64,000 bases of DNA from Mytilus californianus (GCF_021869535.1 NW_026262712.1:94488001-94552000); one strand, 5' to 3'; shown: positions 6,520 to 47,446, counted from the stretch's first letter. Notes: generated from the sequence alone by a model not told the origin. Program-made: numbers and translations.

Positions 6520-7767
6520 TTAAATCGACTTTGTAACAACAACGAAGAATAACACTGCACTAACTGAGATTCCTCCAAATGAAACCCATAAAAAGATTGT
6601 ATTAAGTGTTAAACAGATGTCGTTCCATGAAACATCCTTCCTGTCGTTAGTAGTTAAACTTTCGTTACCATTCACATTTGAATTTGGACGATTTGATGTA
6701 TCGTTTAATATAAAACTCCAATCTCTGTCTGTTCTTGTTTTATCACGTCTACAAAACAATACCAGCCGTTTTAAAAAAGATGGTATGTGACGATTCTTAT
6801 CGTTCAGTTGAAACCTAAGACATAGAATAGTGCAAAAACATATCAAAGAACTGAACACGAGGCCAAACATCAGAAAGTAGCTTAGTAAAGACATTGGTTC
6901 AGATGTTTTAGGCAGGTTATCTCCTATCAAAGTCAGAAATACAGCTATTGCAAGTAATACAGTTATAGCATATGAAACTCGTTCTCCTGAGTTTGGAGGT
7001 GAAACAAATACGCATGCATTTAACAACATCAGAAATCTAACAGGAAGTACAATGTTTACAACATAAAAACCTGGACGTCTCTTCATTGAAATAGACATAT
7101 CAATGAATGACAAACCAATCGAAACATCTACTACTAGTATACTTTTGGCAGACGCGGAATTTATCTTTCAACTCCCATGTTCCGTATAATAATTCAGGTT
7201 AATGTCAGAAAATGACTGCAACACAATTTCAATTGACGAAGATCCCCATGCCATCAAACGTATTGTACAAGTCTGTTCGTCAAACGTGAAGTAAGTTATA
7301 TCCACACTACATGAACTAATTAAAATTTCACCTGGTGTCCAGTATGCAAAACCATTGCTAGAATACCTTACCGTCATAAAATCTTTCCCAATCTTTTTGA
7401 TTTTACTGAACGGATTTGTAATAACAAGTGATGGTTTCCATATATCATCTTGTAAAAACAACATAGTTTTCGTATCATTGTAGTCTAGTGGATTCCAAGT
7501 CATTCTTGAATCATACCATGTGATTCGAAAAAATCCAATGACGGCATATTTTCCGTTAACTTCGTCAAATTCTTGAATGGCACCCAAATTGAAAGAAACA
7601 TTAATTTGTGAAGCAACTGATTGGTCATCTCCTGGTCTAATCTTTTTATTGTAGTCCATTGCCATTTTTGTATATAATCTGTTAACATCAGATAGGGTAG
7701 AGCCAAAATTAGGTTTTCCACTATTTAGCAAAAGCAGCAGAAAAAGTATCAGTTTAATCCACGCCAT
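6520..7767 (-). pseudogene. Intronless nAChR-like Cys-loop receptor, copy 1, with in-frame nonsense codon
   Basis: ORFs 7168..7767 and 6520..7113 are in one frame, separated by TGA at 7170-7168 where paralogs have TGG (HGSW). Also a 6-nt in-frame insertion in loop C, FPFD->FTFD, PVIF->PVRF in TM1 and VLPP->VSPP. Confidence 0.9.
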
Positions 7768-8717
7768 TTGTCACATTTGTACTGTTACCACTTTGTTGTC
7801 AAATTTTAGATATAACAATGTTTTCGAATATCTAAATCATTGTACATAATCAGTCCATGAATAGTTAAATAATGAAATTAAGATTTCCTCATTAGTAGCC
7901 AACTGGTTTTTTTTTCGTATGTAGTCTGTGAATCGAATACTATTTACTTATTCATCTATTATCATCAGTGTCAATATACGAACTGTTACATCCTTTTTCT
8001 TCCAATGTATACCGTGCAGATTCTATGCCTATTTTTAATATACAGTTTTGTATCACTGTCTAAAAACAATAATATCCTCCTTCGACAGAAATAAACTCTT
8101 ACAAAGTACATGTTGATTGTCGAAACTTGAACGACTCAAACAATTGTATATGCTCATTATTCATATGTCCATCTGTATGTAATTTAACACTTAGTCGATT
8201 TAATCATTAAAACTTTTTTAGGTAATCAATACAATTAATAGAAGTTATTATATTTCAAATATTATAAAGAAATTTGTGTTCATGGTTATTACTGTTATAA
8301 TACGTTTGGGAATTTACGTTAAACACTTACTGTCCAGGAAATCTTCAAATAAATGGTTGAAAATCAGTAAATGGAAAACATCGATTAAATAACTTAAACA
8401 ATGCAGTGTTAACATAGTATTTCTATATGGCACCAGTCAAACGTTTAGTCAGTTGATATTTACACGTTTTCTTAATTACAACATGATTGTTTTTTGACAC
8501 TGAGGGCCTTGTTTTAACTTTTTTCTGTATATTTGCAGTAACGTTTGATTTAATGTTCCACTCAAAAGTTTCGCGTATTTACAGTATACTGTTATAGCAT
8601 CACTGATGTATACCCAACATTTCCTTTCATTTATAATATGATTACATTTTCATATAGCTAAAAAATTTTGAGAGCTCAACCAAAATATGGAGGGAAGAAA
8701 GATATTAGTAATCCAAA

Positions 8718-8945
8718 CTAAAATCCTACCAAAGTAAAAGCTATTATTAGTTGAGAAACGTCATTCTCCATACGCGGATGAAGTTGGTGAATTGCTGTTA
8801 AGGTGAGAAAAAATATCATTTCAGAATTGAAATCGTCTCGTTTGTCAAAGATTCTGTTACTGGGATAACGTCCGTTGTCAAATTCGAGGTAAATGTCTAG
8901 AAATGAGGCGGAGGAAACCGATGCGTACATCTAATAAACCGATTA
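8718..8945 (-). mobile_element. Short Naiad-type Penelope RT remnant (also ~15700-15905 and ~22000-22190)
   Basis: SASFLDIYLEFDNG..RIFDKRDDFN resembles ASYLDLFLNIYTDG..KVYDKRDDFNF of the RT at 51182..51796. Confidence 0.75.
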
Positions 8946-9060
8946 CGATTTTGTAGATCAAAGTGAAAAAAAACAAAAATCAAAGAAATTACATTTACTC
9001 CAAAAGGAGCGAGGTCTGGTGTGTTGACATCGTAATAACATAAACGGTACAAATTTTTCT

Positions 9061-9104
9061 GCACCAGATGCGCATTTCGACAATCAATGTCTCTTCAGTG
9101 ATGC
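9061..9104 (-). ncRNA. Type I hammerhead ribozyme, family 1, intact
   Basis: Minus strand GCATCA CTGAAGA GACA-TTGAT-TGTC GAAA TGCGCA TC^ TGGTGC: helix I 6 bp, core CUGANGA, helix II 4 bp, GAAA, palindromic helix III, AUC cleavage triplet. Confidence 0.85.
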
Positions 9105-9199
9105 TCGAGGCCAAAAGTGAGTAAGTGTCTCCTGCTTTTTATACACCTCCCTCTGTGTGAATCCACACTCAGTCCAAATGTTACAGTTTGAAATAGAAC

Positions 9200-10020
9200 A
9201 CCATCGGTAATATTACAGATCAGACGATTATTCCGGTATCTAAAGATCTTAGACCGTGGAAACATGTCGTTAGTGAGTTAAGATACACGCACATCGGTTC
9301 TGTTTACCAAATTTGTGATGGTGACCGTAAAACTTACGTCGTTTCGATTTCTGTTCTTCTTGCTCATAGTCCTGTAAAACTGATGTTTGTCTAAGGAGCA
9401 CAATATAACATACGTATAGTGTGAATGTTCACGATCGTACAGTAGTAAATTAGATATGTAAACGCCATAATAGTGGTAGAGGGTATGTTACTGTTAAGAA
9501 ATGGGCAGATGACAATTGGAAAGTTGAAATAATCACATTTGTTATTAATTCTGGTTTGAAATTGTCCATGTATGTCGAGATTGAAGAAAGAAGGAAATGA
9601 AGTAGACCTTCTATATTCGGTGTCCCAAATCTCAAGTTCACTGCAATGTGGATTATTGAGCAACAAGACAAAAAATTCAATATAAGTGAAAGCGAAAATA
9701 AAAAACCTTGGAAAATGTATTTTTCTTTTTGCCTTTGAGAAGTGAGGCAAAAGATATCGAAGGGATATTCAAACTCATAAGTCGAAAACAAACTGATAAT
9801 GCTATGGCAAAAAACGAAAAACGACGAAAAGACAATCAGCAGAAAACAAAACACAACATAGATAACTAAAAAGTGAGTAACACGAGCCCAACCGAAACCG
9901 GGGATGATCTCAGGTGCTCCGGAAGGGTAAGCAGATCCTTTTCTGCAGGTGGCACCAATGAGAAGGTCCTGTATAAATTCTGCTTCCTTTAACATAAAAA
10001 TAACCAACTTTCTGTTGAAG
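9200..10020 (-). mobile_element. 3' part of Naiad-type Penelope RT, decayed, with family A SINE inserted
   Basis: EAEFIQDLL / LLNNPHCSELEIWDT / DYFNFPIVICPFLNSNIPS / RKFYGHHH match the RT at 51182..51796. Confidence 0.8.
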
Positions 10021-10290
10021 TATTATTCCACCAAACTCAACAAATATATTGAATCGCAATCAAGGAGTAACACGACGGGTGTCACACGTGGAGCGGGATC
10101 TGCCTACCCTTCTGGAGCACCTGAGATCAACCCCATTCTTCGTGGGGTTCTTGTTGCTCAGTCTTTGGTTTTCTACGTTGTGTTTTGTTTTTTGTTGTTT
10201 GTCTGTTTGTCTTTTTCGTTTTTTGCCATGGCGTTGTCAGTTTATTTTCGACTTAAGTTTGAATGTCCCTTTGGTATCCTTCGCCTCTCT
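9741..10290. repeat. Inverted pair of family A SINE-like repeats (also 16718-17270 and 22915-23490)
   Basis: 9741-9957 and 10067-10290 are opposite-orientation copies about 110 bp apart. Confidence 0.85.
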
Positions 10291-10570
10291 TTTTATATTC
10301 CTATATTTGAATCTCTCCGTTAGGGTACATCGCTTTTTTTTTCTTTTTACAATACAATCTTGTTTCAACATCGCGTTCTCTTGTTCATTGACCAACTGAA
10401 GTTGTTTCATTATGAAACATTAAGTTTCTGTAAAAAAATCTGAAGGTTTCCCCAGGAACAAAGTTGGTTAATGGTTCAATAAAAACCACCTGTTCTTTAT
10501 ATTGAACTGAAATCTAAATAATTCATTTCTTCTTAGACCACGGAATAGTATTGTAAATATATATATATAA

Positions 10571-10997
10571 AGAATGTGTTTTCAGCCTTGTATCACCATC
10601 ACTGGTGATCCGATGGATAAAACCTCTCATAGAGTTGTCACTGGTTCAGACGTACTTATAATATACTGTGACTGCATCCTACATTAATTTGTAAGATCCT
10701 TTACGATAGATAATTCAGCTGATCTGTAAAAATTCCATGTTCATTCCTTATATATCATGTACTGTGTTTCGACGCTAGATTAAAACTGACGAGGAAAGGT
10801 AACACCCGGCCACCGAAAGCTTTATTATTGTAGAGCCTAGGTGGTCGAGTGGTGTAGCGCGTCGGGCACAGTGCAAGGCGATTTGGTGCCACGATATCTC
10901 TGTAGCATGAGTTCCTATCCCGGCCAGGGAACAACAAAAAATTTGCTTCCGCAAATTTACAGATCTAACATTGTTGGGCTGTTATTTAGACGAATTG
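10571..10997 (+). mobile_element. Composite element with internal tRNA-like segment, inserted in a (TA)n run
   Basis: A-box-like TGGTCGAGTGG (10842-10852), B-box-like GAGTTCCTATCC (10909-10920), hairpin AAATTTGC-TTCC-GCAAATTT. Empty (TA)n site at ~17540-17580. Confidence 0.7.
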
Positions 10998-11367
10998 TAT
11001 ATAAATATACAAGTCTAAATTGAAAACAACGTTCAAACCTATGATTGCGCTGAATAAAAACCGCAATCTTTAATTTTTATACGTGTGTATGCAAAAAAAA
11101 AATTCTTGGTAGAGGGGTCTAAATACAGCACAAACAACATTTTCCAAAAGACCAAAAAAGTGAAAAAGTATATTTTAACAAAACGCATATAACTAGCAGG
11201 TGGAACAACGGATGTTCTTAAACCCTGCAGACTGCTATTGGCAATTGCCAAATAAACGGATAACAAGCTGTAACAAAATGGATCTTAATTATTAATTTAA
11301 TACCAAACAGAAAACAATAAACTTCCGGAAAAGATGGTATACCGTAAACAAAAGGTGCAAAATAAGT

Positions 11368-11411
11368 ACACCATATCCGGATTTCGACAATTAATGTCTC
11401 TTAAGTGATGT
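11368..11411 (-). ncRNA. Type I hammerhead ribozyme, family 2, core-mutated (probably inactive)
   Basis: ACATCA CTTAAGA GACATTAATTGTC GAAA TCCGGA TA^ TGGTGT; core G changed to T. Confidence 0.6.
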
Positions 11412-12268
11412 TAGGAATCGAAACGGTATTTGGAAGCCATATAATTGTCCTCAATTTAGGATAGACTCGCGAATTTGGAAGAGTTGAAATAGGATGAACG
11501 GATCATATATATATATATTGGTACTTCACGATTTTGATAGTATAAGTGAGGCGAAAGATACCAAAATGGAAATCAAATTCATCAACCGAAAATAAACTGA
11601 CGACGCCTTGGCAAAAAAATCTGTAAAAATTTAAAACAGACAAACGTAAAAAATATTAATCTAGGCAAGAAGCCGAACTTGTTTTGCTATATGATATAAA
11701 TAATAACAAGACTGACCACAATACGTCTTTTATTCAAAATGAGACTATTTCAAATTTAATTTGCAAATAAAACATTTGTTATTCCAAATTTAATTTGCAA
11801 ATCAAAACATTTGACTTCAAAATTCTTAATTGTGATTAAAATATAATTCATAAGAAATAAGAAATAATATCAACTAAAAGAAACCAATTTAAAAGTTGCA
11901 AAAAATAGTATAGAAGGTGGGAAGAAAACTCTGGCCCACAAGCATGAAAATATATACATACTTTCTCCTGTATATTAATTTGTAGGTTATATGATGTTAT
12001 AAGCACAAAAACTCATTAAAGGTAATTAATTGAATAACTGCAAATTATTAAATCCCTGGTGATAAAACGACATTTCTAGTAATAATAAAGTTTAAACTAA
12101 CGTACTTGTCTTTATACAATTGGAGTTTTTCATTTTATAATTAATATCCTGCAAATTATCGAATAAAATGATATTTACAATCAGTAAATGATCAGAAAGC
12201 GATGATACAGCTATTATCTCGGTATGCTAAATACCCGCTTTATTTTTTTCATTTCTATAATAACATAA

Positions 12269-12710
12269 GGCCTAAAAAAAAAATTCTGTGTTTCCGGTAA
12301 CATCATTTTGTTAAATAGGGTCGGTAGGTCGGATTTATTTATTTATTTTTTTTTTTTTTTGACATTGTAAACGAAATCCGGAAAATTATCATGGTTTTTC
12401 CAAGTCCGTGTCCGTAATTAGTTTCAAATACCGGAAGTGCGGCCATTTGAAATGTTTTTGAAGCACCTGCCGTGCAAATTTCTTGGATTTTAACCTTTTT
12501 GGAATACCTTTTGACATAAATAAAATGTTTTACTGGCTTTCTGTGCAGATCCATAAATAATTATGTCGATTAACAGAAGCCTGTGTCAAAAACAGGGTTG
12601 GTTGATACCAATTTTTTTTTTTTTTGAAGATCCAATAAAAAAATTAGGGTCGGGGCTAAAAAAACAGGGTCGGTCGGGTTACCGGAAACACAGATTTTTT
12701 TTTCTCGGCC
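12269..12710. mobile_element. PIF/Harbinger-type MITE, 442 bp
   Basis: TAA TSD (12266-68, 12711-13); ~33-bp TIRs GGCC(T/G)A..TCTGTGTTTCCGGTAAC; empty site TAACATAAATATTCC at 19031 and 25431. Confidence 0.9.
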
Positions 12711-13502
12711 TAAATATTCCAGACCATATAGAAGTAAACTACTCAGTTCCCTCTTTTACAAATATGATATCGTTTATCTTCAAATGTGATAAGCATGTGA
12801 ATGATACGATCTATCCAAATGACGGACTAGCACATCTTCCCCTTTTATCCTAAACTTTGTGACATTAAAAGGAATAGTGTTGATGGCTTTATAATATTAC
12901 TCTTTTATTTACATTTCGTTTCAATTAACAAACTTCTGGAAAGTATTTTATTAAAGTATATATATTGTTTAGTGTTCTTAACATTATTTAAAAGTATGTT
13001 TATCTAAATGTTGGTTTTTATTTTCAGTCCCTCAATTTTGTACAGCAAACTTTTGTATCATTCTTTGGACAATAAATATTCTAAAAGTCATTCTGTTCTT
13101 TCCATTTCTATATCAATTGGAAACAAAGGAGGAGGTACTATAAGGACCAAACTTTATTTTCTTTTATATGTAAATAGCATAATGAAATCTGGACACTTAG
13201 GTTCAAAACTATTAGGATAGAAATGTACAAAATGACATATATGACATAAAATGGTCATTTTTAAGAGATTTGTTATAAAATTGGTTGTTACTTAAACCTA
13301 ACCCAAAACGATATTTCGTATCAATAAACAATTATTTTTAACATCTCGTAACAAAATACCTCGTCGTGGTAATTTTATACTGATGTCAGGTGAACATCTG
13401 AAGGTTATGTTTCGATATTTTTATATTGTGTCTTTAAGAACTCAAGCGAACTTTTCAAGTGGCCCTTTCGTACATTCTCTTTGATTACTTTACTGTATTT
13501 AT

Positions 13503-14744
13503 CTAAATCGACTTTGTAACAAAAACGAAGAATAACAATGCACTTACTGAGATTCCTCCAAATGAAACCCATAAAAAGATTGTATTAAGTGTTAAACAGA
13601 TGTCGTTCCATGAAACATCGTTCCTGTCGTTAGTAGTTAAACTTTCATTGCCATTCACATTTGAATTTTGACGATTTGATGTGTTGTTTAATATAATACT
13701 CCATTCTCTCTCTGTTCTTGGTTTATCGGGTCTACAACACAATACCAGCCGTTTTAAAAAAGATGGTATGTGACGATTCTTATCTTTCAGTTGAAGCCTA
13801 TGACATAGAATAGTGCAAAAACATATCAAAGAACTAAACACGAGGCCAAACATCAGAAAGTAACTTAGCAAAGACATTGGTTCAGATGTTTTAGGCAGGT
13901 TATCTCCTATCAAAGTCAGAAATACAGCTATTGCAAGTAATACAGTTATAGCATATGAAACTCGTTCTCCTGAGTTTGGTGGTAAAACAAATACGCATGC
14001 ATTTAACAACATCAGAAATATAACAGGAAGTACAATGTTTACAACATAAAAACCTGGACGTCTCTTCATTGAAATAGACATATCAATGAATGACGAACCA
14101 ATCGAACCATCTACTATACTTTTGGCAGACGCAGAATTTATCTTCCAGCTCCCATGTTCTAAATAATAATTCATGTTAATGTCAGAAGATGACAGCAATA
14201 CAATTTCATTTGATGAAGTTCCCCATGCCATCAAACGTATTGTACAAATCTGTTCGTCAAACGGGAAGTACGTAATATCCACACTACATGAACTAATTAA
14301 AATTTCACCTGGTGTCCAGTATGCAAAACCATTGCTAGAATATCTTACCGTCATAAAATCTTTCCCAATCTTTTCGATTTTACTGAATGGATTTGTAATA
14401 ACAAGTGTTGGTTTCCATATATCGTCTTGTAAAAACAACATAGTGTTCGTATCATTGTAGTCTAGTGGATTCCAAGTCATTCTTGAATCATACCATGTGA
14501 TTTGAAAAAATCCAATGACGGCATATTTTCCGTTAACTTCGTCGAATTCTTGAATTGCACCCAAATTGAAAGAAACATTAATTTGTGAAGCAACTGATTG
14601 GTCATTTCCTGGTCTAATCTTTTTATTGTAGTCCATTACCATTTTTGTATATAATCTGCTAACATCAGACAGGGTAGAGCCAAAATTAGGTTTTCCACTA
14701 TCAAGCAATAGCAGTAGGAAACATATCAATTTATTCAACGCCAT
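13503..14744 (-). CDS. Intronless nicotinic acetylcholine receptor-like subunit (non-alpha type), copy 2, 413 aa
   Basis: Signal peptide, Cys-loop CSVDITYFPFDEQIC (C-x13-C), KRRP before TM1, TM2 GERVSYAITVLLAIAVFLTLIGDNLP, four TM segments, no vicinal CC. Confidence 0.95.
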   Translation of the reverse strand: MALNKLICFLLLLLDSGKPNFGSTLSDVSRLYTKMVMDYNKKIRPGNDQSVASQINVSFNLGAIQEFDEVNGKYAVIGFFQITWYDSRMTWNPLDYNDTNTMLFLQDDIWKPTLVITNPFSKIEKIGKDFMTVRYSSNGFAYWTPGEILISSCSVDITYFPFDEQICTIRLMAWGTSSNEIVLLSSSDINMNYYLEHGSWKINSASAKSIVDGSIGSSFIDMSISMKRRPGFYVVNIVLPVIFLMLLNACVFVLPPNSGERVSYAITVLLAIAVFLTLIGDNLPKTSEPMSLLSYFLMFGLVFSSLICFCTILCHRLQLKDKNRHIPSFLKRLVLCCRPDKPRTEREWSIILNNTSNRQNSNVNGNESLTTNDRNDVSWNDICLTLNTIFLWVSFGGISVSALLFFVFVTKSI

Positions 14745-16036
14745 TTGTCACATTTGTACAGTTACCACTTTGTTGTCAAATTGTACATATAACAATGTTT
14801 TCGAATTTCTAAATCATTGTTCATACTTAGTCCATGAATAGTTAAATAATGAAATTCGCTTTTGAGATTTTCTCATTAGTAGCCAGCATCTTTATTTCGT
14901 ATGTAGTCTGTGAATCGAATACTTTTTACTTATTCATCAATTATCATCAGTGTCAATATACGAACTGTTACATCATTCTTCTTCCAATGTATACCGTGCA
15001 GCTTATATGTTTTATTAAAATATACAGTTTTGTATCACTGACTAAAAAACAATAATATCCTCCTTCGACAAAAATAAAATCTTACAAAGTACATGTCGAC
15101 TGTCAAACTTTAACGGCTCAAACAATCATATATGTTTATTATTTATATGTCCTTTGTCATTTGAAACTTTGACGATTTAATCATTAGAACTCATTTCAGG
15201 TAATCAATACAATTAGTACAAGTTATTTATATTTCTGATATTAGAATAAAATGTGTGTTCATGATATTTACTTTTATAATACGTTTGGGATTTTACATTA
15301 AACACTTACTGCCCATGAAATCATTAAAGAAATGGTTGAAAATAAGTAAATGGACAACATCGATTAAATAACTAAAACAATGCAGTGTTATCATAGTAAT
15401 TCTATATGGCACCAGTCAAACGTTTAGTCAGTTGATATTTACACGTTATCTTAATTACAACATGACTGTCCTTGACACTGAGGGCCTTGTTTTAACTTTT
15501 TTCTGTATATTTGCAGTAACGTTTAATTTAATGTTCCACTCAAAAGTTTCGCGTGTTTACAGTATACTGTTATAGCATCACTGATGTATACCCAACATTT
15601 CCTTTCATTTATAATATGATAACATTTTCATATAGCTAAACAAATTTTGAGAGCTCAACCAAAATATGGAGGGAAGAAAGATATTAGTAATCCAAACTAA
15701 AATCCTACCAAAGTAAAAGCTATTAGTAGTTGAGAAACGTCATTCTCCATACGCGGATGAAGTTGGTGAATTGCTGTTAAGGTGAGAAAATATCATTTCA
15801 GAATTGAAATCGTCTCGTTTGTCAAAGATTCTGTTACTGGGATAACGTCCGTTGTCAAATTCGAGGTAAATGTCTAGAAATGAGGCGGAGGAAACCGATG
15901 CGTACATCTAATAAACCGATTACGATATTGTAGATGAAAATGAAAAAAACAAAAATTAAAGAAATTACATTTACTCCAAAAGGAGCGAGGTCTGGTGTGT
16001 TGACATCGTAATAACATAAACGGTACAAATTTTTCT

Positions 16037-16080
16037 GCACCGGATGCGCATTTCGACAATCAATGTCTCTTCAGTGATGC
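16037..16080 (-). ncRNA. Type I hammerhead ribozyme, family 1, mismatch at first helix I pair
   Basis: Same as 9061..9104 but TC^CGGTGC gives an A-C pair next to the cleavage site. Confidence 0.7.
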
Positions 16081-16224
16081 TCGAGGCCAAAAGTGAGTAA
16101 GTGTCTCCTGCTTTTTATACACCTCCCGCCGTGTGAATCCACACTCAGTCCAAATGTTACAGTTTGAAATAGAACATCATTGGTTATATTACAGATCAGA
16201 CGATTATTCCGGTATCTAAAGATC

Positions 16225-16960
16225 TTAGACCGTGGAAACATGTCGTTAGTGAGTTAAGATACACGCACATCGGTTCTGTTTACCAAATTTGTGATGGTGA
16301 CCGTAAAACTTACGTCGTTTCGATTTCTGTTCTTCTTGCTCATAGCCCTGTAGAACTGGTGTTTGTCTAAGGAGCACAATGTAACATACGTATAGTGTGA
16401 ATGTTCACGATCGTACAGTAGTAATTGAGATATGTAAACGCCATAATAGTGGTAGAGGGTATGTTACTGTTAACAAATGGGCAGATGACAATTGGAAAGT
16501 TGAAATAATCACATTTGTTATTAATTCGGGTTTGAAATCGTCCATGTATGTCAATAGTGGAGAAAGAAAGAAATGAAGTAGACCTTCTGTATTCGGTATC
16601 CCAAATCTCAAGTTCACTGCAATGTAGGTTATTGAGCAACAAGACAACAATTTCAATATCACTGAAAGTGAAAATAAAAAACCTTGGAAAATGCATTTTT
16701 CTTTTTGCCTTTGAGAAGAGAGGCAAAAGATATCGAAGGGATATTCAAACTCATAAGTCGAAAACAAACTGATAATGCTATGGCAAAAAACGAAAAACGA
16801 CGAAAAGACAAACAGCAGAACACAAAACACAACATAGAAAACTAAAAAGTGAGTAACACGAGCCCAACCAAAACCAAGTGCTCCGGAAGGGTAAGCAGAT
16901 CCTTCTCTGCAGGTGGCACCCATGAGAAGGTCCTGTATGAATTCTGCTTCTTATAACATA
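16225..16960 (-). mobile_element. Paralogous Naiad-type RT remnant (spacer 2-3)
   Basis: ORF 16367..16726 carries SELEIWDT...DYFNFPIVICPFVNSNIPS. Confidence 0.8.
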
Positions 16961-17538
16961 CAAACAATTCTGCCAGTAGCAGTGCTCAATTGGAACCAAT
17001 TGGAAAACCATCTTTCTGTTGAAGTATTATTCCACTAAACTCAACAAATACATTGAATCCCAATCAAGGAGTAACACGACGGGTGTCACATGTGGAGCGG
17101 GATCTGAGATCAACCCCATTCTTGGTGGGGTTCGTGTTGATCAGTCTTTGGTTTTCTACGTTGTGTTTTGTGTTCTGTTGTTTGTCTGTTTGTCTTTTTC
17201 TTTTTTGCCATGGCGTTGTCAGTTTTATTTCGACTTGAGTTTGAATGTCCCTTTGGTATCCTTCGCTTCTCTTTTCATATTCCTATATTTTAATCTCTCC
17301 GTTAGGGTACATCGCTTTTTTTTTCTTTTTACAATACAATCTTGTTTTAACATCGCGTTCTCTTGTTCATTGACCAACTGAAGTTGTTTCATTATGAAAC
17401 ATTAAGTTTCTGTAAAAAAATCTGAAGGTTTCCCCAGGAACAAAGTTGGTTAATGATTCAGTAAAAACCACCTGTTCTTACTATTGAACTGAAATTTAAA
17501 TAATCCATTTCTTCTTACACCACGGAATAGTATTGTAA

Positions 17539-17577
<39 letters not shown>

Positions 17578-17748
17578 AACAAGTCTAAATTGAAAACAAA
17601 GTTCAAACCTATGATTGCGTTGGATAAAAACCGCAATTTTTATACGTGTGCATGAAAAACAAATTTCTTGGAAGAGGAGTCTAAATACAGCACAAACAAC
17701 ATTTTCCAAAAGACCAAAAAAGTGAAAAAGTATATTTTAACAAAACGC

Positions 17749-17992
17749 GTTTTGTTCACGCATCGTTGTAAATATAACGAAATTTGATAAGACTGTCGTA
17801 CAAGTGAGAGGTTTAGCGCTATAAAACCAGGTTCAATCCACCATTTTCTACATTTGAAAATGCCTGTACCAAGTCAGGAATATGACAGTTGTTGTCCATT
17901 CGTTTGATGTGTTTTGTCATTTGATTTTGCCATGTGATTAGGGACTTTCCGATTGAATTTTCCTCGGAGTTCAGTATTTTTGTGATTTTACT
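17749..17992 (+). mobile_element. Family B SINE-like insertion specific to spacer 2-3
   Basis: Absent at the paralogous sites AAAACGCAT..ACTAGCAGG (~11180 and ~24400). Confidence 0.8.
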
Positions 17993-18172
17993 TTTGACTA
18001 GCAGGTCGAACAACGGATGTTCTTAAATCCTGCTGACTGCCATTGGCGATTGTCAAATAAACGGATCACAAGATGTAACAAAATGGATCTTAATTATTAA
18101 TTTAATACCAAACAGAAAAAAATAAACTTGCGAAAAAAGTGGTATACCGCAAACAAAAGGTGTAACATTAGT

Positions 18173-18216
18173 ACACCATATCCGGATTTCGATAATTAAT
18201 GTCTCTTCAGTGATGT
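18173..18216 (-). ncRNA. Type I hammerhead ribozyme, family 2, helix II mismatch
   Basis: ACATCA CTGAAGA GACATTAATTATC GAAA TCCGGA TA^ TGGTGT; C-A mismatch in helix II. Confidence 0.65.
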
Positions 18217-22294: not shown

Positions 22295-22338
22295 GCACCA
22301 GATGCGCATTTCGACAATCAATGTCTCTTCAGTGATGC
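22295..22338 (-). ncRNA. Type I hammerhead ribozyme, family 1, intact
   Basis: Identical to 9061..9104. Confidence 0.85.
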
Positions 22339-23766: not shown

Positions 23767-23794
<28 letters not shown>

Positions 23795-34954: not shown

Positions 34955-35189
34955 TTTTGGTCCCGCGAGGCGGATGTGGAATTTTAAAGCAACTTTTCTG
35001 GTGTGTAACTGAACTAAAATTATTTTGGGGAAAATTTATAAGAAATGGAGCAGACATTTGAGTCAGTACTTGTTGTAATTGGATATGACAGTCCTAAGCA
35101 GACCAGTTTTGAAGAGTTGGGCCGATAGTTACTCTTGGGGTATTTTATTTTCATAGTTTGGTTCATTTTGTAAATATATATTATTTAGT

Positions 35190-35933
35190 TATGATTAGGT
35201 TTGAAGAAAAACCTTCTTTTTTTTATGGTGTCAGCATTGATATCACCGATTACTTTGTTCATTTTGAGACAGTTTCTCTTCGGAATCAGTGGAATGAATG
35301 TGAGATGGCATTTCAGTTAATAATGAATTTGAGAGGTGATGCTCAAACTATTTTACGTTTCTTAAAAGGCCTCAGTTGTATGATTATGACTGCTTGAAAA
35401 ATTTACTCATTTAGAGGTTCAATTCTAAGGAGAGGGTGACATATTTTAAATTTCAACTGCGAGTTTGTAGATTGAAGGAAAATGAAACAATTTCTGAATT
35501 TGGTCAGCGTTTTAAGATACTAGCTCATAAGGCTTATCCTGATAATTTTTCAGATTTAGATGTGTATTTTACTGACTTATTTACATCATGTTTGAATATT
35601 GAGATGGCTAAATTTGTCACCTTTATGCACCCTAATAGTTTAGATGAGGCTTTAACATTAGCTATTGAATATGAAGCTTTTCATTTTACTGGTGATCCAG
35701 AGACTATTGGTGAGTCAGAAAGTTCAGCTTGTTGTAAAACTGTTCATAACAGTTTTGAAACTTTAATTAATATATTGAGGAGGCGATTGAAATCACGAAG
35801 GAAACATAAACCTAAGAAGTGTTTTAAATGTCATCAATCAGGTCATGTCAGGTCTAAGTGTCCAAATGTGTCTTTCAGAGTTCATGCTAGAGATGAAAGG
35901 TCTGCAGATGGACAAGTGAAATTCCAAAAATAG
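35190..35933 (+). pseudogene. Gypsy gag remnant, copy 2
   Basis: ORFs 35158..35397 and 35436..35933 share the same frameshift and stop. Confidence 0.85.
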
Positions 35934-37071
35934 AAAGGATATTAAAGAACGATTTGATTCCCAATTATTGTAGTTCAGGTTGTGCTACCTTTGTTTGATG
36001 TTTGTTTTTACATTGTGTTGTATACATATAGTTTTACTTTAGGTTTATTTCAATGTATTCAGAGATGTTACACTTTTCAGTTTTGGCTGTTTGGTTTTCT
36101 TTTTCAAGGGAGGGATGCCGTGCATCTCATCTTGTTATATTTTTCATTTGTATTAGTTGAATAATGACTGTTCTTCTGTGTGAAGTTTGAAGTGTAGACC
36201 GTTAGCTAGTTTAAGTAGGAATTGGTTTGTTTTATGAGTTGTTGCTCGTTCACTGGATTGTAATCTCTAGCTAAATATTTAATATTTAGAGAGTTTATGG
36301 AATTCTGACTTCTTTACTTTTGTTAGTCATGGCAGAAACTAATAGAATGAAAGATAAGCTTCAAGTTAGGAACACTTCTAGCTCATACAGATGGATCTCA
36401 TCCATTATTTAGAACCTTGCACAAAATTTGGGCATCACCCATTTTATTTTGAGACCCTTGCACATAGATGGACCCGATCCATCTCCGGTGGTACACCATT
36501 TGTGCTACCGTTATCAACAACGTTGGAGTGCAGTAATAGAACCCGGTTGTACACGTCATATGTGCCACTGTAAGATCAACATTGGTGGACATTGCATGGT
36601 ACAACTTTTCATGGATTTCAACATTATATGTGCCGTTACAATATAGGCCGTACCACTGATTCTGAAGCCTACTTACCAAGAAGACCTAAAGTCGCGTCCG
36701 TTATCCTTTGAACCTGATGCCGATGTGTGTTTGTGTATGCGTTAAACAGTGACATTTATTTAAAAGTGATATGTTACATATGTTTGAAAGACTTTTAATC
36801 TGATGAACGTTGATGGACTTTCGTTAAATCTAATTGTCATGTTATTTCATATACATTTGTTTTCGTAATGTAGGAGGAGTGTAGCAGATTGGTGTTGTGA
36901 TCTCCCTTGAACAGTCTCATTAATTAACTTTAACTGACGTATATTTGATTTAATATTTAATCATGACATTTGCAGTTTGCGTATTCATTGGTACAGATAC
37001 ATAAATTTGATAGACATTTAAGTTTGCAGAATTTATTTATGAAATTTATCGTTTGTCTTAGGGGGGAGGAA

Positions 37072-37656
37072 TGTGGCAGACGGGATTATTATATAATTGT
37101 TATTTTCCTTGTTTAAAACTATGAATTTCATATTTCTTTATTTAATAATTTACATGATGCTTTTCAGTACATATTTGTTAAATTGAATAGCTATTGCTAT
37201 TTTGAATTCATTGGTTAAAGATATTTATTTATATTCTAAAATTTAGTATTTGCATCGTCGCAAAACATTTATTACCTTCTTCGGAACTTATATATTTTAT
37301 ATGACTGATTTGAAATTATTATGTTGAATTGTCTGAGCACTGACGTTCAGTCCAACCTAGGAAAGCCGTGCTTTCCAATCACACTTTAATGTTAGTGCAT
37401 CTGCCATATGCTTTCTTAATACGGGTAAATATTGAAGTAATTGAATGCTCCATTTCTCTACTTTTGGGTTACATAATAAAAGTTGTATTTGTTGATTAAA
37501 TTATATATTGTTTTTACTGATTTTGGTTTTCATTTACATACATATTTAAATAGCGCTTTTACATTTGGCATCCATCGTCTCCGTTAAATCAGTTCACAAA
37601 CTAGAACAAGCTGTGGTCCGCATCCCCGAATCTCCAGCAGAATTGCTCCTGCTACA
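37072..37656 (+). repeat. LTR3, 585 bp
   Basis: Near-identical to LTR2; PPT before, PBS after. Confidence 0.93.
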
Positions 37657-37891
37657 TTTTGGTCCCGCGAGGCGGATGTGGAATTTTAAAGCAACTTTTC
37701 TGGTGTGTAACTGAACTAAAATTATTTTGGGGAAAATTTATAAGAAATGGAGCAGACATTTGAGTCAGTACTTGTTGTAATTGGATATGACAGTCCTAAG
37801 CAGACCAGTTTTGAAGAGTTGGGCCGATAGTTACTCTTGGGGTATTTTATTTTCATAGTTTGGTTCATTTTGTAAATATATATTATTTAGT

Positions 37892-38635
37892 TATGATTAG
37901 GTTTGAAGAAAAACCTTCTTTTTTTTATGGTGTCAGCATTGATATCACCGATTACTTTGTTCATTTTGAGACAGTTTCTCTTCGGAATCAGTGGAATGAA
38001 TGTGAGATGGCATTTCAGTTAATAATGAATTTGAGAGGTGATGCTCAAACTATTTTACGTTTCTTAAAAGGCCTCAGTTGTATGATTATGACTGCTTGAA
38101 AAATTTACTCATTTAGAGGTTCAATTCTAAGGAGAGGGTGACATATTTTAAATTTCAACTGCGAGTTTGTAGATTGAAGGAAAATGAAACAATTTCTGAA
38201 TTTGGTCAGCGTTTTAAGATACTAGCTCATAAGGCTTATCCTGATAATTTTTCAGATTTAGATGTGTATTTTACTGACTTATTTACATCATGTTTGAATA
38301 TTGAGATGGCTAAATTTGTCACCTTTATGCACCCTAATAGTTTAGATGAGGCTTTAACATTAGCTATTGAATATGAAGCTTTTCATTTTACTGGTGATCC
38401 AGAGACTATTGGTGAGTCAGAAAGTTCAGCTTGTTGTAATACTGTTCATAACAGTTTTGAAACTTTAATTAATATATTGAGGAGGCGATTGAAATCACGA
38501 AGGAAACATAAACCTAAGAAGTGTTTTAAATGTCATCAATCAGGTCATGTCAGGTCTAAGTGTCCAAATGTGTCTTTCAGAGTTCATGCTAGAGATGAAA
38601 GGTCTGCAGATGGACAAGTGAAATTCCAAAAATAG
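37892..38635 (+). pseudogene. Gypsy gag remnant, copy 3
   Basis: ORFs 37860..38099 and 38138..38635. Confidence 0.85.
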
Positions 38636-39774
38636 AAAGGATATTAAAGAACGATTTGATTCCCAATTATTGTAGTTCAGGTTGTGTTACCTTTGTTTGA
38701 TGTTTGTTTTTACATTGTGTTGTATACATATAGTTTTACTTTAGGTTTATTTCAATGTATTCAGAGATGTTACACTTTTCAGTTTTGGCTGTTTGGTTTT
38801 CTTTTTCAAGGGAGGGATGCCGTGCATCTCATCTTGTTATATTTTTCATTTGTATTAGTTGAATTATGACTGTTCTTCTGTGTGAAGTTTGAAGTGTAGA
38901 CCGTTAGCTAGTTTAAGTAGGAATTGGTTTGTTTTATGAGTTGTTGCTCGTTTGTCTGGATTGTAATCTCTAGCTAAATATTTAATATTTAGAGAGTTTA
39001 TGGAATTCTGACTTCTTTACTTTTGTTAGTCATGGCAGAAACTAATAGAATGAAAGATAAGCTTCAAGTTAGGAACACTTCTAGCTCATACAGATGGATC
39101 TTATCCATTATTTAGAACCTTGCACAAAATTTGGGCATCACCCATTTTATTTTGAGACCCTTGCACATAGATGGACCCGATCCATCTCCGGGGGTACACC
39201 ATTTGTGCTACCGTAATCAACAACGTTGGAGTGCAGTAATAGAATCCGGTTGTACACGTCATATGTGCCACTGTAAGATCAACATTGGTGGACATTGCAT
39301 GGTACAACTTTTCATGGATTTCAACATTATATGTGCCGTTACAATATAGGCCGTACCACTGATTCTGAAGCCTACTTACCAAGAAGACCTAAAGTCGCGT
39401 CCGTTATCCTTTGAACCTGATGCCGATGTGTGTTTGTGTATGCGTTAAACAGTGACATTTATTTAAAAGTGATATGTTACATATGTTTGAAAGACTTTTA
39501 ATCTGATGAACGTTGATGGACTTTCGTTAAATCTAATTGTCATGTTATTTCATATACATTTGTTTTCGTAATGTAGGAGGAGTGTAGCAGATTGGTGTTG
39601 TGATCTCCCTTGAACAGTCTCATTAATTAACTTTAACTGACGTATATTTGATTTAATATTTAATCATGACATTTGCAGTTTGCGTATTCATTGGTACAGA
39701 TACATAAATTTGATAGACATTTAAGTTTGCAGACTTTATTTATGAAATTTATCGTTTGTCTTAGGGGGGAGGAA

Positions 39775-40359
39775 TGTGGCAGACGGGATTATTATATAAT
39801 TGTTATTTTCCTTGTTTAAAACTATGAATTTCATATTTCTTTATTTAATAATTTACATGATGCTTTTCAGTACATATTTGTTAAATTGAATAGCTATTGC
39901 TATTTTGAATTCATTGGTTAAAGATATCTATTTATATTCTAAAATTTAGTATTTGCATCGTCGCAAAACATTTATTACCTTCTTCGGAACTTATATATTT
40001 TATATGACTGATTTGAAATAATTATGTTGAATTGTCTGAGCACTGACGTTCAGTCCAACCTAGGAAAGCCGTGCTTTCCAATCACACTTTAATGTTAGTG
40101 CATCTGCCATATGCTTTCTTAATACGGGTAAATATTGAAGTAATTGAATGCTCCATTTCTCTACTTTTGGGTTACATAATAAAAGTTGTATTTGTTGATT
40201 AAATTATATATTGTTTTTACTGATTTTGGTTTTCATTTACATACATATTTAAATAGCGCTTTTACATTTGGCATCCATCGTCTCCGTTAAATCAGTTCAC
40301 AAACTAGAACAAGCTGTGGTCCGCATCCCCGAATATCCAGCAGAATTGCTTCTGGTAGA
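39775..40359 (+). repeat. LTR4, 585 bp, degenerate 3' end
   Basis: Ends GCTTCTGGTAGA instead of GCTCCTGCTACA; followed by ATTT TSD and no PBS. Confidence 0.9.
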
Positions 40360-44803: not shown

Positions 44804-45445
44804 ACTGAACCATAAAATGAGTTCAAGGACAATTGACATATGACAGACGAAAACTTCGTAACATAAGGTATCTGCATATAAGGTATGAAGCATCCAGGTC
44901 TTCTTCCTTCTGAAATATAAAGCTTTATACTAATAGTTTAGGCGGCAGCAGGATAGTAATACCTATGCTTCGCATACTGCGACGAAAGACAAAATCCGGA
45001 TCAAAGACTAAAAAGGCCAGGTTCTGCAGTAAGTTACTTTAACTGCAATGAAACTAGCATTTGAATTAAAAAAAAATAGTATTGGAACATAAAATTGGAA
45101 AACAGGAAGTATATATTAAAACAACTTTATAATGGAAGGTGCATAACCTCAATAGGTTTGAAAACTTTCTGTAAAGTTTCAGGTCTGCGTTAAAATATGT
45201 AGCAGTAGATTACACAATTCTAATACCATTTGATACCTTATCCTTTATGTAAAAATAGTTAATATTTATGTAACGTCTTACCACTCTATCTTCTTTTTTG
45301 TAAATCCTTTACCTACACACTAAAGTCGGGGTTGTTTAAAATGGTTAGTAGTTTCAAATTGGTGGCATTAATATATGCATCTTTTATGAAGAACTGAAAT
45401 TCTGTATTGGAATAGTAGCATTATTTTTTAGTATCGGGTTTGTAC

Positions 45446-45645
45446 TAACATGAGCAACATGACTGGTGCCACATATGGAGCAGGATCTGCATACCCTTCC
45501 GGAGCACCTGAGATCACCCCATGTTTTTGTCGGTGGGGTTCGTGTTGCTTTTGTTTGTTTGTCTTTTTCTTTTTTAGCCATGGCGTTGTCAGTTTATTTT
45601 TGACATATGAGTTTGAATGTCCCTTTGGTATCTTTCGCCTTTCTT
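45446..45645 (+). mobile_element. Family A SINE-like repeat
   Basis: GGTGCCACATATGGAGCAGGATCTGCATACCCTTCCGGAGCACCTGAGATC...GGTATCTTTCGCC. Confidence 0.8.
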
Positions 45646-46204
45646 TTGTGAATGAAAGGCTCAACATTCGGCATATCAGTCCCGTGCAATACCTAGACTA
45701 GACCTCACAATTGTGGGTATTGGACTGGACTGGTATTAGTCTGGTCTTTAATTTGTACTGTGTGTGTCCGATTGTGATATTGTGACCGAGTATGAATTTT
45801 GCATGGACGATGATGCACGCATGACAGGAGACCCGTACCCTGTCTCGTTCTTTTAGGGGTTCATGAGATTCCCTCATTTTGTGTTTGATACCTTGGTGTG
45901 TCACTTCCTTATTGATGTACAAGATTTAAACATCGTAAAACTACTGTCTCCTTAATTTAGGGTTACATCGGGACTAATTTGAAAATGGTGTGAACATCTA
46001 CATTCATCTCATTTATAATGATTTTACAAATTTCGAGCAAATCAAAAGAAATCCTTTTTCTTTTTTATTCTCTTGATTTTTCATATGTTTGCATATTGCT
46101 ATTTGTGTTTGATTAATTAATGGGATTACATAAGTCTCCATTGCCGCCATTGTTTGGCATATAAAATGTTCATTTGTTAATTCAAACAATTATTCTGTGT
46201 AAAT

Positions 46205-47446
46205 TTAAATAGTTTTCGTTATAATCATGAAGAATAACAATACACTGACTGAGAGTACAACAAACGAAGTCCTTAGAAGAATTGTATCAAGTGCTTTACA
46301 TATATCACGCCACGAAATATCTTGCTTATTATTATCAATCAAACCTTCACACGCGTTCAAATCTGAATTATGAACATTTGATTTGTTATTCTGCACTTCA
46401 ACCCAATTTTCTCTCTTTTTCAAGTTATTCCGTCTACAGCACAGTACTATCCACTTTAGATAACTTGGTATTGGGTGATTCTTATTTCTAAACTGAAGTC
46501 GAAGACAAATCATTGTACTTAAGCATGTCAAAGAACTGAAGACGAGGTCAAATATAAGGAAATAGCCAAGCAAAGACATCGGTTCAGATGTTTTCGGTAG
46601 GTGATTTCCGATCAGAGTCAAAAACACAGATATCGCCAATAATACCGTGATAGCGTATGAAACTCTTTCTCCGGAGTCTGGTGGTAACAGAAATACGCAT
46701 GAATTCAAAGCCATTAAAAATATAACAGGAAGGACAACGTTGATGACATAAAACCCTGGACGTCTCTTCATTGACACTGACATATCAATTAATGACAAAC
46801 CAGTAACTTCGTCTACTCTGTCATTGAAAGCCGTTGACGTTATCCGCCAGGTTCCGTGTTCCGAAAAATAATTCAGTTCGATGCCATTAAATGACTGCAA
46901 TAAAATTTCATTTGATAAAGTTCCCCATGCCATCAAACGTATTGTACAAATCTGTTCGTCAAACGGAAAGTAAGTAATATCCACACTACATGAACTAATT
47001 AAAATTTCTCCTGGTGTCCAGTATGCAAGTCCGTTGCTGAAATATCTTACTGTCATAAAGTCTTTTCCAATCTGATCGATTTTACAAAACGGATTTGTAA
47101 TAACTAGTGTTGGTTTCCATACATCATCCTGTAAAAACGTTAAGGTATGTGTATTGTTATAGTCTAAAGTGTTCCAAGTCATTCTTGAATCATGCCACGT
47201 AATTCTAAAAAATCCAATGACTGCGAATTTTCCGTTTACTTCGTCGAATTCCTGAATGGCACCCAAATTAAAAGATACATTAACACGTGTAGCCAATGAC
47301 TGGTCATCTCCTGGTCTTATTTTTTTATTGTAGTCCATGAATAGTTTTGAATAAAGTCTGTCAACATCAGATAGTCTAGAACCAAAGATAAATGTTCCAC
47401 TGTTGAGCATGAGAAGTTGTAATATGAGAAAGCTATTCCACTCCAT
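46205..47446 (-). CDS. Intronless nAChR-like subunit, divergent paralog (copy 5), 413 aa
   Basis: Identical Cys-loop CSVDITYFPFDEQIC, TM2 GERVSYAITVLLAISVFLTLIGNHLP; divergent signal peptide, loops F/C and M3-M4 loop. Confidence 0.95.
   Translation of the reverse strand: MEWNSFLILQLLMLNSGTFIFGSRLSDVDRLYSKLFMDYNKKIRPGDDQSLATRVNVSFNLGAIQEFDEVNGKFAVIGFFRITWHDSRMTWNTLDYNNTHTLTFLQDDVWKPTLVITNPFCKIDQIGKDFMTVRYFSNGLAYWTPGEILISSCSVDITYFPFDEQICTIRLMAWGTLSNEILLQSFNGIELNYFSEHGTWRITSTAFNDRVDEVTGLSLIDMSVSMKRRPGFYVINVVLPVIFLMALNSCVFLLPPDSGERVSYAITVLLAISVFLTLIGNHLPKTSEPMSLLGYFLIFDLVFSSLTCLSTMICLRLQFRNKNHPIPSYLKWIVLCCRRNNLKKRENWVEVQNNKSNVHNSDLNACEGLIDNNKQDISWRDICKALDTILLRTSFVVLSVSVLLFFMIITKTI

What the first reader, a model, noticed from the sequence alone, without database searches (positions are those of the whole stretch)
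6520..47446. Intronless Cys-loop receptor cluster lacking the acetylcholine pocket: candidate chemoreceptor family
Seen: five single-exon ~413-aa genes. Loop C (WKINSASAKSIVDGSIGSSFIDM) has no Tyr-x-Cys-Cys and is about 4 residues shorter than in alpha7-type subunits; loop A lacks its Tyr (WKPTLVITN) and loop B reads WGTS. The pore keeps cation-type hallmarks (E-1', L9', V13'; D20' in copies 1-4). Paralog differences recur in loop F (LQSFSDINLNYYT / LLSSSDINMNYYL / LQSFNGIELNYFS) and loop C (SIVDGSIGS / SMVDGSIGL / ILVVDVSIGL / DRVDEVTGL), while the Cys-loop and TM2 are nearly invariant. Established: bivalves have large intronless nAChR expansions, and cephalopod chemotactile receptors are nAChR-derived channels that lost ACh binding. 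Inference: this may be an independent bivalve sensory receptor family with a diversifying ligand pocket.
Basis: partly seen in the sequence, partly recalled or inferred. Interest (0 to 1): 0.72.

Follow-up and report, generated by a model that had tools for sequence, protein, structure and literature searches.

The report
Mussel orphan nicotinic-type channel gene array
This is a tandem array of four intact and one broken intron-free mussel genes for nicotinic-receptor-like cation-channel subunits that lack the usual acetylcholine pocket. They are ordinary members of a published bivalve gene expansion, and a sensory role remains untested.

Summary
The genes exist at the stated coordinates, all on the minus strand. 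Only four are intact 413-codon ORFs. The copy at 6520-7767 has a TGG-to-TGA stop at 7168-7170, a 6-bp insertion and near-neutral changes, so it is a pseudogene.

All five are Cys-loop receptor subunits by Pfam, by PDB sequence search and by predicted fold. Loop A Tyr is Thr, there is no loop C Tyr-x-Cys-Cys, and loop D Trp is Phe. The loop B Trp is kept, and the pore has E-1', L9', V13' and D20' (N20' in copy 5).

The array is two old paralogs, B (copy 5) and A (copies 1-4). They lie next to each other in Mytilus galloprovincialis too, and their consecutive accessions suggest the same in M. coruscus. Type A was amplified by segmental duplication of a 6.3-7 kb unit.

All 120 nearest relatives have the same remodelled pocket, and every one that carries a species name is a bivalve. 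An oyster homolog is also single-exon and tandem.

dN/dS is 0.17-0.31. Loops C and F evolve faster (0.4-0.7), but no region exceeds 1.

Stranded RNA reads show low-level transcription from the gene strand. The tissue is unknown.

This matches the published bivalve nAChR expansion. The chemoreceptor idea is neither supported nor refuted. The scan reached the same verdict on another cluster in this genome (s1-340049).

The parts
6520..7767 (-). Copy 1 (type A), a pseudogene. It has 416 codons, TGG>TGA at 7168-7170, a 6-bp loop C insertion, Cys-loop P>T and TM1 I>R.
   Evidence: It has 24 unique nonsynonymous and 12 synonymous changes, against 7 and 17 pooled for copies 2-4 (Fisher p=0.008).
13503..14744 (-). 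Copy 2 (type A), an intact 413-aa non-alpha nAChR-like subunit.
   Evidence: RNA reads at four diagnostic sites carry the copy 1/copy 2 alleles.
19823..21064 (-). Copy 3 (type A), intact, 413 aa. This is the protein that was modelled.
   Evidence: AlphaFold2 mean pLDDT is 83.2. The best structural matches are alpha7, beta2, muscle subunits and 5-HT3A at Z 27-29.
26240..27481 (-). Copy 4 (type A), intact, 413 aa.
46205..47446 (-). Copy 5 (type B), intact, 413 aa. It is 69% identical to type A, has N20' instead of D20', and has Leu at the second loop C Tyr position.
   Evidence: Its ortholog is P0005 in M. galloprovincialis (dS 0.25, omega 0.28).
5382..28167 (.). Block of four tandem segmental-duplication units of 6.3-7 kb. 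Each holds one type A gene plus its intergenic DNA.
   Evidence: Self-BLAST gives 91-96% nucleotide identity through coding and non-coding DNA.
18900..21657 (-). Transcribed span of a type A unit, a minimum estimate. It includes about 0.9 kb after the stop and about 0.6 kb before the ATG.
   Evidence: Stranded RNA reads of run X21 give depth 2-7 on one strand only and no joints. Cover is zero at 21658-22051.
31881..40354 (+). Not part of the receptor family. It is a retroelement-derived 2.7-kb unit repeated about three times at 99% identity, and it fills much of the gap between copies 4 and 5.
   Evidence: The 165-aa ORF gives a sub-threshold Ty3_capsid match and a weak zinc-knuckle match.

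Best explanation
The locus is a tandem array of subunit genes from the bivalve-expanded, intron-poor, non-alpha branch of the nicotinic receptor family. An old pair, type B followed by type A, lies adjacent in M. galloprovincialis, and consecutive accession numbers suggest the same in M. coruscus. In this species, type A was multiplied by unequal crossing-over of a 6.3-7 kb unit. Three copies stay intact and one is decaying.

The intact proteins are under purifying selection and are transcribed at a low level. They keep an almost invariant cation-type pore (GER, L9', V13'), the Cys-loop and the full pentameric-channel fold. I therefore take them to be working subunits of cation-permeable pentamers.

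Four of the five aromatic-box positions are changed (Tyr A to Thr, Tyr C1 to Asp, Tyr C2 to Phe or Leu, Trp D to Phe), and the vicinal cysteines are absent. These subunits therefore cannot build a classical acetylcholine site among themselves.

My inference, about 50% likely, is that they form orphan channels, possibly A with B. These would be gated at the remodelled site around the retained loop B Trp by a small molecule other than acetylcholine. Whether that ligand comes from inside the animal or from the environment is unknown.
For: Family and fold.

Pocket and pore residues.

The same pocket state occurs in all 120 nearest relatives, and every one that carries a species name is a bivalve. 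TM2 entropy is 0.45 bits against 2.56 bits for loop C. The loop B Trp is present in 59 of 64 sequences.

The tree places the genes in a mussel subclade. Its sister group holds the scallop, pearl-oyster and oyster sequences, and the unionid and clam groups lie further out.

Synteny: B then A, 4 kb apart, in M. galloprovincialis. M. coruscus has B plus three A copies with consecutive accessions.

The flanks were duplicated together with the genes.

Selection: omega is 0.17-0.31 among intact paralogs, 0.21-0.28 between orthologs at dS 0.25-0.29, and 0.25 between A and B at dS 0.7-0.8. In ortholog and A-B comparisons TM1-3 omega is 0.06-0.18 and loops A, B, D and E are 0.09-0.3.

Transcription is strand-specific.

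An oyster homolog is single-exon and tandem.

The published description of this expansion matches on every genomic feature (PMC6896357).
Against: - No functional data exist for any member of this clade.
- Expression is low, and the reads at diagnostic sites match copies 1/2 rather than copy 3. Activity of each individual copy is therefore not shown.
- Loops C and F could simply be relaxed because they are not used. That would favour an accessory-subunit role.
- The loop B Trp is also kept in vertebrate non-binding subunits (my own knowledge), so its retention does not prove a working pocket.
Confidence: 0.8

Rival explanations
1. They are accessory or complementary subunits. They do not bind agonist on their own principal face, and they co-assemble with alpha-type mussel subunits into ACh-gated heteromers, as vertebrate beta, delta or alpha5/beta3 subunits do.
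For: They are non-alpha (no vicinal Cys). Complementary-face loops D and E are conserved (omega 0.09-0.3 in ortholog and A-B comparisons), and an aromatic Phe sits at the loop D Trp position in Pteriomorphia. Loop C evolves as fast as the intracellular loop, as expected if it is unused. The pore is a standard nAChR cation pore.
Against: The loop D Trp itself is lost across the clade, replaced by F, V, I, L or A. In C. gigas, non-alpha genes outnumber alpha genes with a complete site by 99 to 13 (PMC6896357), which is hard to explain by accessory roles alone. Some intron-poor members are expressed before ChAT and before the nervous system in oysters (PMC6896357).
Confidence: 0.3
2. One reading: an independent bivalve chemosensory receptor family. 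It would be expressed in peripheral sensory epithelia and gated by environmental cues, with the pocket under diversifying selection, analogous to cephalopod chemotactile receptors.
For: The ACh pocket is lost while the cation pore is kept. Substitutions are concentrated in loops C and F between A and B (21 of 41 against 26 of 165 in the rest of the ECD, p=6e-6) and between A orthologs (p=0.011). The family is intronless and tandem, like the CRs. The idea is raised for divergent mollusc clades in PMC13174522.
Against: No region has omega above 1, and loops C+F reach only 0.4-0.7. Loops A, B, D and E are conserved. The recent intact copies differ at only 2-4 positions in loops C+F. Expression in the one stranded RNA run was low and the tissue is unknown. 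Similarity to CRs is no higher than to vertebrate nAChRs. Fast loops C and F are expected in any pLGIC paralog set.
Confidence: 0.15
3. They are largely redundant, drifting copies on the way to pseudogenes, with no specific function for the array.
For: Copy 1 is already broken and evolves nearly neutrally. Expression is low. Jiao et al. report more silent genes among intron-poor nAChRs.
Against: Four ORFs are intact. Omega is 0.2-0.3, maintained over dS up to 0.8. A and B orthologs are retained in at least four Mytilus species or assemblies. TM2 is near-invariant.
Confidence: 0.07

Closest known systems
Expanded intron-poor, tandemly arrayed bivalve nAChR genes (Jiao et al. 2019, PMC6896357)
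   Same: Single-exon coding regions, tandem arrays with stepwise lineage-specific duplication, mostly non-alpha subunits with altered binding residues, a variable ligand-binding domain, and occasional degenerate copies. The nearest homologs are in mussels, scallops, oysters, pearl oysters, unionids and clams.
   Different: Nothing essential differs. That study did not include Mytilus. This array adds a B/A pair found adjacent in another Mytilus species and a recent amplification of A.
Cephalopod chemotactile receptors CRT1 and CRB1 (PDB 9e6b, 8eiz)
   Same: nAChR-derived, intronless, no canonical ACh site, pentameric-channel fold (Z 22.5-22.6).
   Different: Identity is only 22-24%, no higher than to vertebrate nAChRs or 5-HT3A. 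The CRs are not among the top 60 PDB sequence hits with either the protein or the family profile. No evidence here for sensory expression or hydrophobic ligands. A joint tree was not possible because no CR sequences were available to the tools.
Alpo4, an orphan nAChR-like receptor of the annelid Alvinella pompejana (PDB 8bx5; PMC10338036)
   Same: A lophotrochozoan nAChR-like subunit without the loop C Cys pair. It is unresponsive to ACh, its ligand is unknown, and it is discussed as a product of the lophotrochozoan expansion.
   Different: Alpo4 keeps the aromatic cage (F103, W159, Y199, Y205, W65). The mussel proteins keep only the loop B Trp plus Phe at two positions. Identity is 20% and Z is 23.9.
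Vertebrate non-alpha nAChR subunits (beta, delta, epsilon)
   Same: No vicinal Cys, loop B Trp kept, cation pore. They are among the best sequence and structure matches.
   Different: There is no orthology signal: alpha6, alpha3, alpha1, alpha7, beta, delta and 5-HT3A all score similarly. The loop D Trp used by agonist-binding complementary subunits is replaced. The M3-M4 loop is short (about 60 residues) and the genes have no introns.

Membership tests
[quoted passage not shown] | N-terminal ligand-binding domain plus a four-helix transmembrane domain | tested here: met
   Pfam PF02931 E about 1e-39 and PF02932 E about 1e-18 for all intact copies. The AlphaFold2 model (pLDDT 83) has a beta-sandwich plus M1-M4. 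Z is 27-29 to alpha7, beta2, muscle subunits and 5-HT3A.
[quoted passage not shown] | Cys-x13-Cys signature loop with the FPFD core | tested here: met
   C153 to C167 with YFPFDEQIC in copies 2-5. It is invariant in the 64-sequence family alignment. Copy 1 has P>T and I>T.
nAChR alpha subunit | Vicinal Cys pair (Tyr-x-Cys-Cys) in loop C | tested here: not met
   Ser-Ile (type A) or Val-Thr (type B) aligns to the Cys pair of alpha6 and alpha3. None of the 70 aligned relatives printed shows a Cys pair in loop C.
Canonical acetylcholine-binding site | Aromatic box: Tyr A, Trp B, Tyr C1, Tyr C2 and Trp D | tested here: not met
   The five positions read Thr, Trp, Asp, Phe (Leu in type B) and Phe. 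Only Trp B is retained.
Cation-selective nAChR/5-HT3-type pore | Glu at -1', Leu 9', Val 13', an acidic 20' ring, and no Pro-Ala-Arg anion motif | tested here: met
   TM2 begins SGERVSY, so E is at -1', followed by L9', V13' and D20'. Copy 5 has N20'. Selectivity itself was not measured.
Published bivalve intron-poor nAChR expansion (Jiao et al. 2019) | Intronless coding region, tandem array, nearest homologs bivalve-restricted, lineage-specific duplication | tested here: met
   Uninterrupted ORFs. No RNA joints. Tandem units. All named hits are bivalves. The tree approximately follows bivalve taxonomy, with species-level duplications. The oyster homolog is single-exon and tandem.
Cephalopod chemotactile receptor (CR) clade | Phylogenetic placement within the CR or CR-like clade | tested here: inconclusive
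   No CR sequences could be put in a tree. Indirectly, identity to CRB1 and CRT1 is 22-24%, equal to vertebrate nAChRs, and the CRs are absent from the top 60 PDB hits. PMC13174522 reports a CR-like clade that includes bivalves. Membership of that clade is untested.
Cephalopod chemotactile receptor (CR) clade | Expression in peripheral sensory cells and gating by poorly soluble environmental compounds | not testable with these tools
   Run metadata are coded, so tissue is unknown.

The most novel reading that the evidence does not exclude
The adjacent B/A gene pair, found in M. galloprovincialis and suggested in M. coruscus, encodes the two subunits of a mussel-specific heteromeric orphan channel. 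The channel would be gated by an environmental or settlement-related cue at a remodelled site around the loop B Trp. That would make it an independent, non-cephalopod case of a nicotinic receptor turned chemoreceptor, with copy-number amplification of the A subunit tuning sensitivity in this species.
Probability: 0.1. Interest if true: 0.7.

Novelty: new member of a known kind. Interest (0 to 1): 0.25.

Why it matters
Bivalves carry 99-217 nicotinic-type genes, and no ligand is known for the large non-alpha, pocket-altered majority. This locus adds no new principle. It does offer a compact, well-defined candidate for deorphanisation: a B/A pair found adjacent in another Mytilus species, under purifying selection and transcribed, with a natural pseudogene as an internal control for neutral rates. 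If such channels respond to non-cholinergic or environmental ligands, the octopus chemotactile-receptor story would extend to a second mollusc class. If they only work with alpha partners, the expansion is about cholinergic receptor diversity instead.

Tried and rejected
1. Rfam found none at gathering thresholds over the whole window. It also found none at E up to 1 over 5000-30000, where the only hit was a sub-threshold MIR827-like hairpin.

2. A tree with cephalopod CRs and canonical mollusc subunits. No tool supplied those sequences. The 120 hits listed by the word search named only bivalves, and PDB chains cannot be exported. I used PDB sequence ranks and structure-based identities instead.

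3. Positive selection. Region-wise Nei-Gojobori omega never exceeded 1. No site-model software was available, and I did not write one for about 10 sequences.

4. Fresh retroposition as the origin of the local copies: rejected. The flanks are co-duplicated at 91-96% identity, so the copies arose by DNA-level tandem duplication. Intronlessness is shared with an oyster homolog, so it is old.

5. Tissue of expression. The run labels are coded, so it could not be obtained.

6. The large representative-protein search was not run, because the family assignment was already clear.
Full report
**Observation**

ORF listing finds four uninterrupted 413-codon frames on the minus strand: 13503-14744, 19823-21064, 26240-27481 and 46205-47446.
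- The fifth locus, 6520-7767, appears as two ORFs in the same frame.
- Translating it shows 416 codons with an in-frame stop where the others have the Trp of the HGSW motif.
- The DNA reads TGA against TGG in copy 3, and it carries a 6-bp insertion a few codons downstream.
- So there are four intact genes and one broken copy, not five genes.

The window has no N.

**Family**

All intact copies, and both halves of copy 1, match Pfam Neur_chan_LBD and Neur_chan_memb far above threshold.
- The best solved-structure sequence hits are human alpha6 (6.5e-48), alpha3 and the muscle and Torpedo subunits. 5-HT3A and alpha7 follow closely.
- An AlphaFold2 model of copy 3, built on a 64-sequence family alignment, has mean pLDDT 83.2. 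Its only disordered stretch is 342-373 in the M3-M4 loop.
- Foldseek and VIA-align return nAChR chains first: alpha7 Z 29.3, beta2 28.7, muscle epsilon 28.5 and 5-HT3A 27.3.

**Pocket and pore**

The HMMER alignments to alpha6 and alpha3 give these substitutions:

| Position | Canonical residue | Here |
|---|---|---|
| Loop A | Tyr | Thr |
| Loop B | Trp | Trp (kept) |
| Loop C, first Tyr | Tyr | Asp |
| Loop C, vicinal pair | Cys-Cys | Ser-Ile |
| Loop C, second Tyr | Tyr | Phe (Leu in copy 5) |
| Loop D | Trp | Phe |

- Loop C is 2 residues shorter than in alpha6 and alpha3, not about 4.
- TM2 has Glu at -1', Leu 9', Val 13' and Asp 20'. Copy 5 has Asn 20'.

**Structure of the array**

Self-comparison shows four tandem units of 6.3-7 kb between about 5382 and 28167. 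They are 91-96% identical through genes and intergenic DNA alike. Copy 5 shares only its coding region with them, at 78-80% nucleotide identity. So copies 1-4 (type A) arose by DNA-level segmental duplication, and copy 5 (type B) is an older paralog.

The word-based protein search identifies the genome as a mussel. Type A is 86-87% identical to 'alpha-6-like' proteins of Mytilus galloprovincialis and M. edulis, and type B has its own M. galloprovincialis ortholog.
- In the M. galloprovincialis chromosome record the two genes lie in the same order, B then A, 4 kb apart. Both are single-exon.
- tblastn found no further A copy in the 10 kb fetched on each side.
- M. coruscus has one B and three A proteins with consecutive accessions. 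They are 93-95% identical to the window proteins.
- So the window comes from a close relative of M. coruscus, and the consecutive accessions suggest that M. coruscus has a similar array.
- In a small tree, copies 2-4 group together (87/88). Copy 1 groups weakly (80/87) with the M. coruscus A copies. The order of the duplications relative to speciation is not resolved.

**Selection**

| Comparison | dN/dS (Nei-Gojobori) | dS |
|---|---|---|
| Intact paralogs (copies 2-5) | 0.17-0.31 | – |
| A orthologs (window vs M. galloprovincialis) | 0.21-0.25 | about 0.29 |
| B orthologs | 0.28 | 0.25 |
| A vs B | about 0.25 | 0.7-0.8 |

Both gene types have been kept by purifying selection.

Copy 1 behaves differently. 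It has 24 unique nonsynonymous changes (including the stop) against 12 synonymous ones. Copies 2-4 pooled have 7 against 17 (Fisher p=0.008). Its unique changes include Pro to Thr in the Cys-loop and Ile to Arg in TM1.

By region, in the ortholog and A-B comparisons:

| Region | omega |
|---|---|
| TM1-3 | 0.06-0.18 |
| Loops A, B, D, E | 0.09-0.30 |
| Loops C+F | 0.39-0.70 |
| Intracellular loop | 0.22-0.82 |

- Amino-acid differences are enriched in loops C+F between A and B (21 of 41 against 26 of 165 in the rest of the extracellular domain, p=6e-6) and between A orthologs (p=0.011).
- The enrichment is absent or marginal among the recent intact copies, with 2-4 differences.
- So there is an excess of change in two pocket loops. 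It stays below neutrality and equals the rate of the unstructured intracellular loop.
- This is what relaxed constraint on exposed loops gives in any pentameric-channel family. It is not evidence for diversifying selection.

**The wider family**

- All of the 120 nearest relatives that carry a species name are bivalves: mussels, scallops, oysters, pearl oyster, unionids and venerid, mactrid and myid clams.
- Every aligned relative that was printed lacks a loop C Cys pair and the loop A Tyr, and has F, V, I, L, A or a similar residue at the loop D Trp position.
- The loop B Trp is present in 59 of 64 sequences.
- TM2 is nearly invariant, at 0.45 bits per column against 2.56 for loop C.
- The ML tree places the window genes in a mussel subclade. 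Its sister group holds the scallop, pearl-oyster and oyster sequences, and the unionid and clam groups lie further out.
- An Ostrea edulis homolog is also single-exon and sits next to another family member.
- The remodelled pocket, the absence of introns and the tandem habit are therefore old, shared features of a large bivalve clade.

**Expression**

One stranded RNA run from the organism that best holds the sequence covers 18900 to about 21650 at depth 2-7, with only 6% of the run read.
- The cover is on one mate orientation only. By the usual convention for stranded libraries, that means RNA from the minus (gene) strand.
- There are no joints, and cover is zero at 21658-22051. The intergenic repeats at 22249-24800 are covered on both strands.
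- At four diagnostic sites the reads carry the copy 1/copy 2 alleles, not those of copy 3. Transcription of the type A family is therefore shown, but not of each copy.
- RNA-seq contigs about 96% identical to the type A coding region occur in at least one other study, from an RNA-seq library labelled 'mollusc metagenome'.
- Tissue labels are coded, so the key test of the sensory idea could not be made.

**Comparison with what is known**

Jiao et al. 2019 (PMC6896357) describe 99-217 nAChR genes in five bivalves.
- They are mostly intronless or intron-poor and sit in stepwise, lineage-specific tandem arrays.
- In C. gigas only 33 of 132 are alpha-type, and only 13 of those have a complete principal site.

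The Alpo4 paper (PMC10338036) and the MolluscaGenes preprint (PMC13174522) both raise the idea that divergent lophotrochozoan nAChR-like receptors have non-cholinergic, possibly chemosensory, ligands. The preprint also reports a CR-like clade that includes bivalves.

Against cephalopod chemotactile receptors, structure-based identity is 22% (squid CRB1, Z 22.6) and 24% (octopus CRT1, Z 22.5). That is the same as to alpha7, beta2, epsilon and 5-HT3A. The CRs do not reach the top 60 in PDB sequence searches with either the protein or the family profile. I could not obtain CR or canonical mollusc sequences for a joint tree, so membership of the CR-like clade remains open.

**Verdict**

The locus is an ordinary member of a published gene expansion.

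The most likely reading is that these are working subunits of cation-selective pentameric channels that cannot form a classical ACh site.
- I put about 50% on an orphan, non-ACh-gated channel, possibly an A/B heteromer.
- I put about 30% on an accessory role beside alpha-type partners.
- I put about 15% on the specific chemosensory proposal.
- These readings overlap, so the percentages are not meant to add up.

A follow-up agent reached the same verdict on another intronless cluster in this genome (s1-340049).

Noticed in passing
window 31881-40354: A 2.7-kb unit is repeated about three times head to tail at 99% identity. Each unit carries a 165-aa ORF with a sub-threshold Ty3_capsid match and a weak zinc-knuckle match, and a 93-aa ORF on the other strand. 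It looks like a recently amplified retroelement fragment, and it fills much of the gap between copies 4 and 5.
   Followed up: partly
window 22249-24800 (and the equivalent parts of the other duplication units): The intergenic DNA between the receptor genes consists of high-copy repeats. In RNA runs from several organisms they are covered very deeply on both strands. There are many 'opposite strands' joints around 22989-23455, which suggests hairpin- or MITE-like elements.
   Followed up: no
window 9061-24629: An earlier first-reader note (s1-302771) proposes hammerhead ribozymes between the receptor genes. Rfam found no hammerhead family at gathering thresholds over the whole window, nor at E up to 1 over 5000-30000.
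   Followed up: yes
window 5237-5358 (+): A sub-threshold Rfam match to the plant MIR827 precursor (40.3 bits against a gathering score of 65, E 1.4e-4). It lies just outside the first duplication unit. It is most likely a chance hairpin or inverted repeat, not a miRNA gene.
   Followed up: no
window 62534-63430 (+): An intact-looking 298-aa Tc1/mariner-type transposase ORF with DDE_3 and HTH_Tnp_Tc3_2 domains.
   Followed up: partly
window 51182-51796 (+): A 204-aa ORF with a YIDD-like motif that resembles a reverse-transcriptase fragment. It has no Pfam hit at E up to 0.01.
   Followed up: partly
window 57730-58443 and 61306-61790: Short tandem satellites with periods of about 55 bp and about 59 bp, at 90-98% identity between copies.
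   Followed up: no
L002:1-166 (M. galloprovincialis OZ263151.1): In M. galloprovincialis the gene upstream of the B/A pair encodes a C2 plus RBD-FIP (Rab11-FIP-like) protein. No ORF of 80 codons or more that resembles it appeared in window 47447-64000, which holds transposon remnants. Its exons may lie beyond the window.
   Followed up: no
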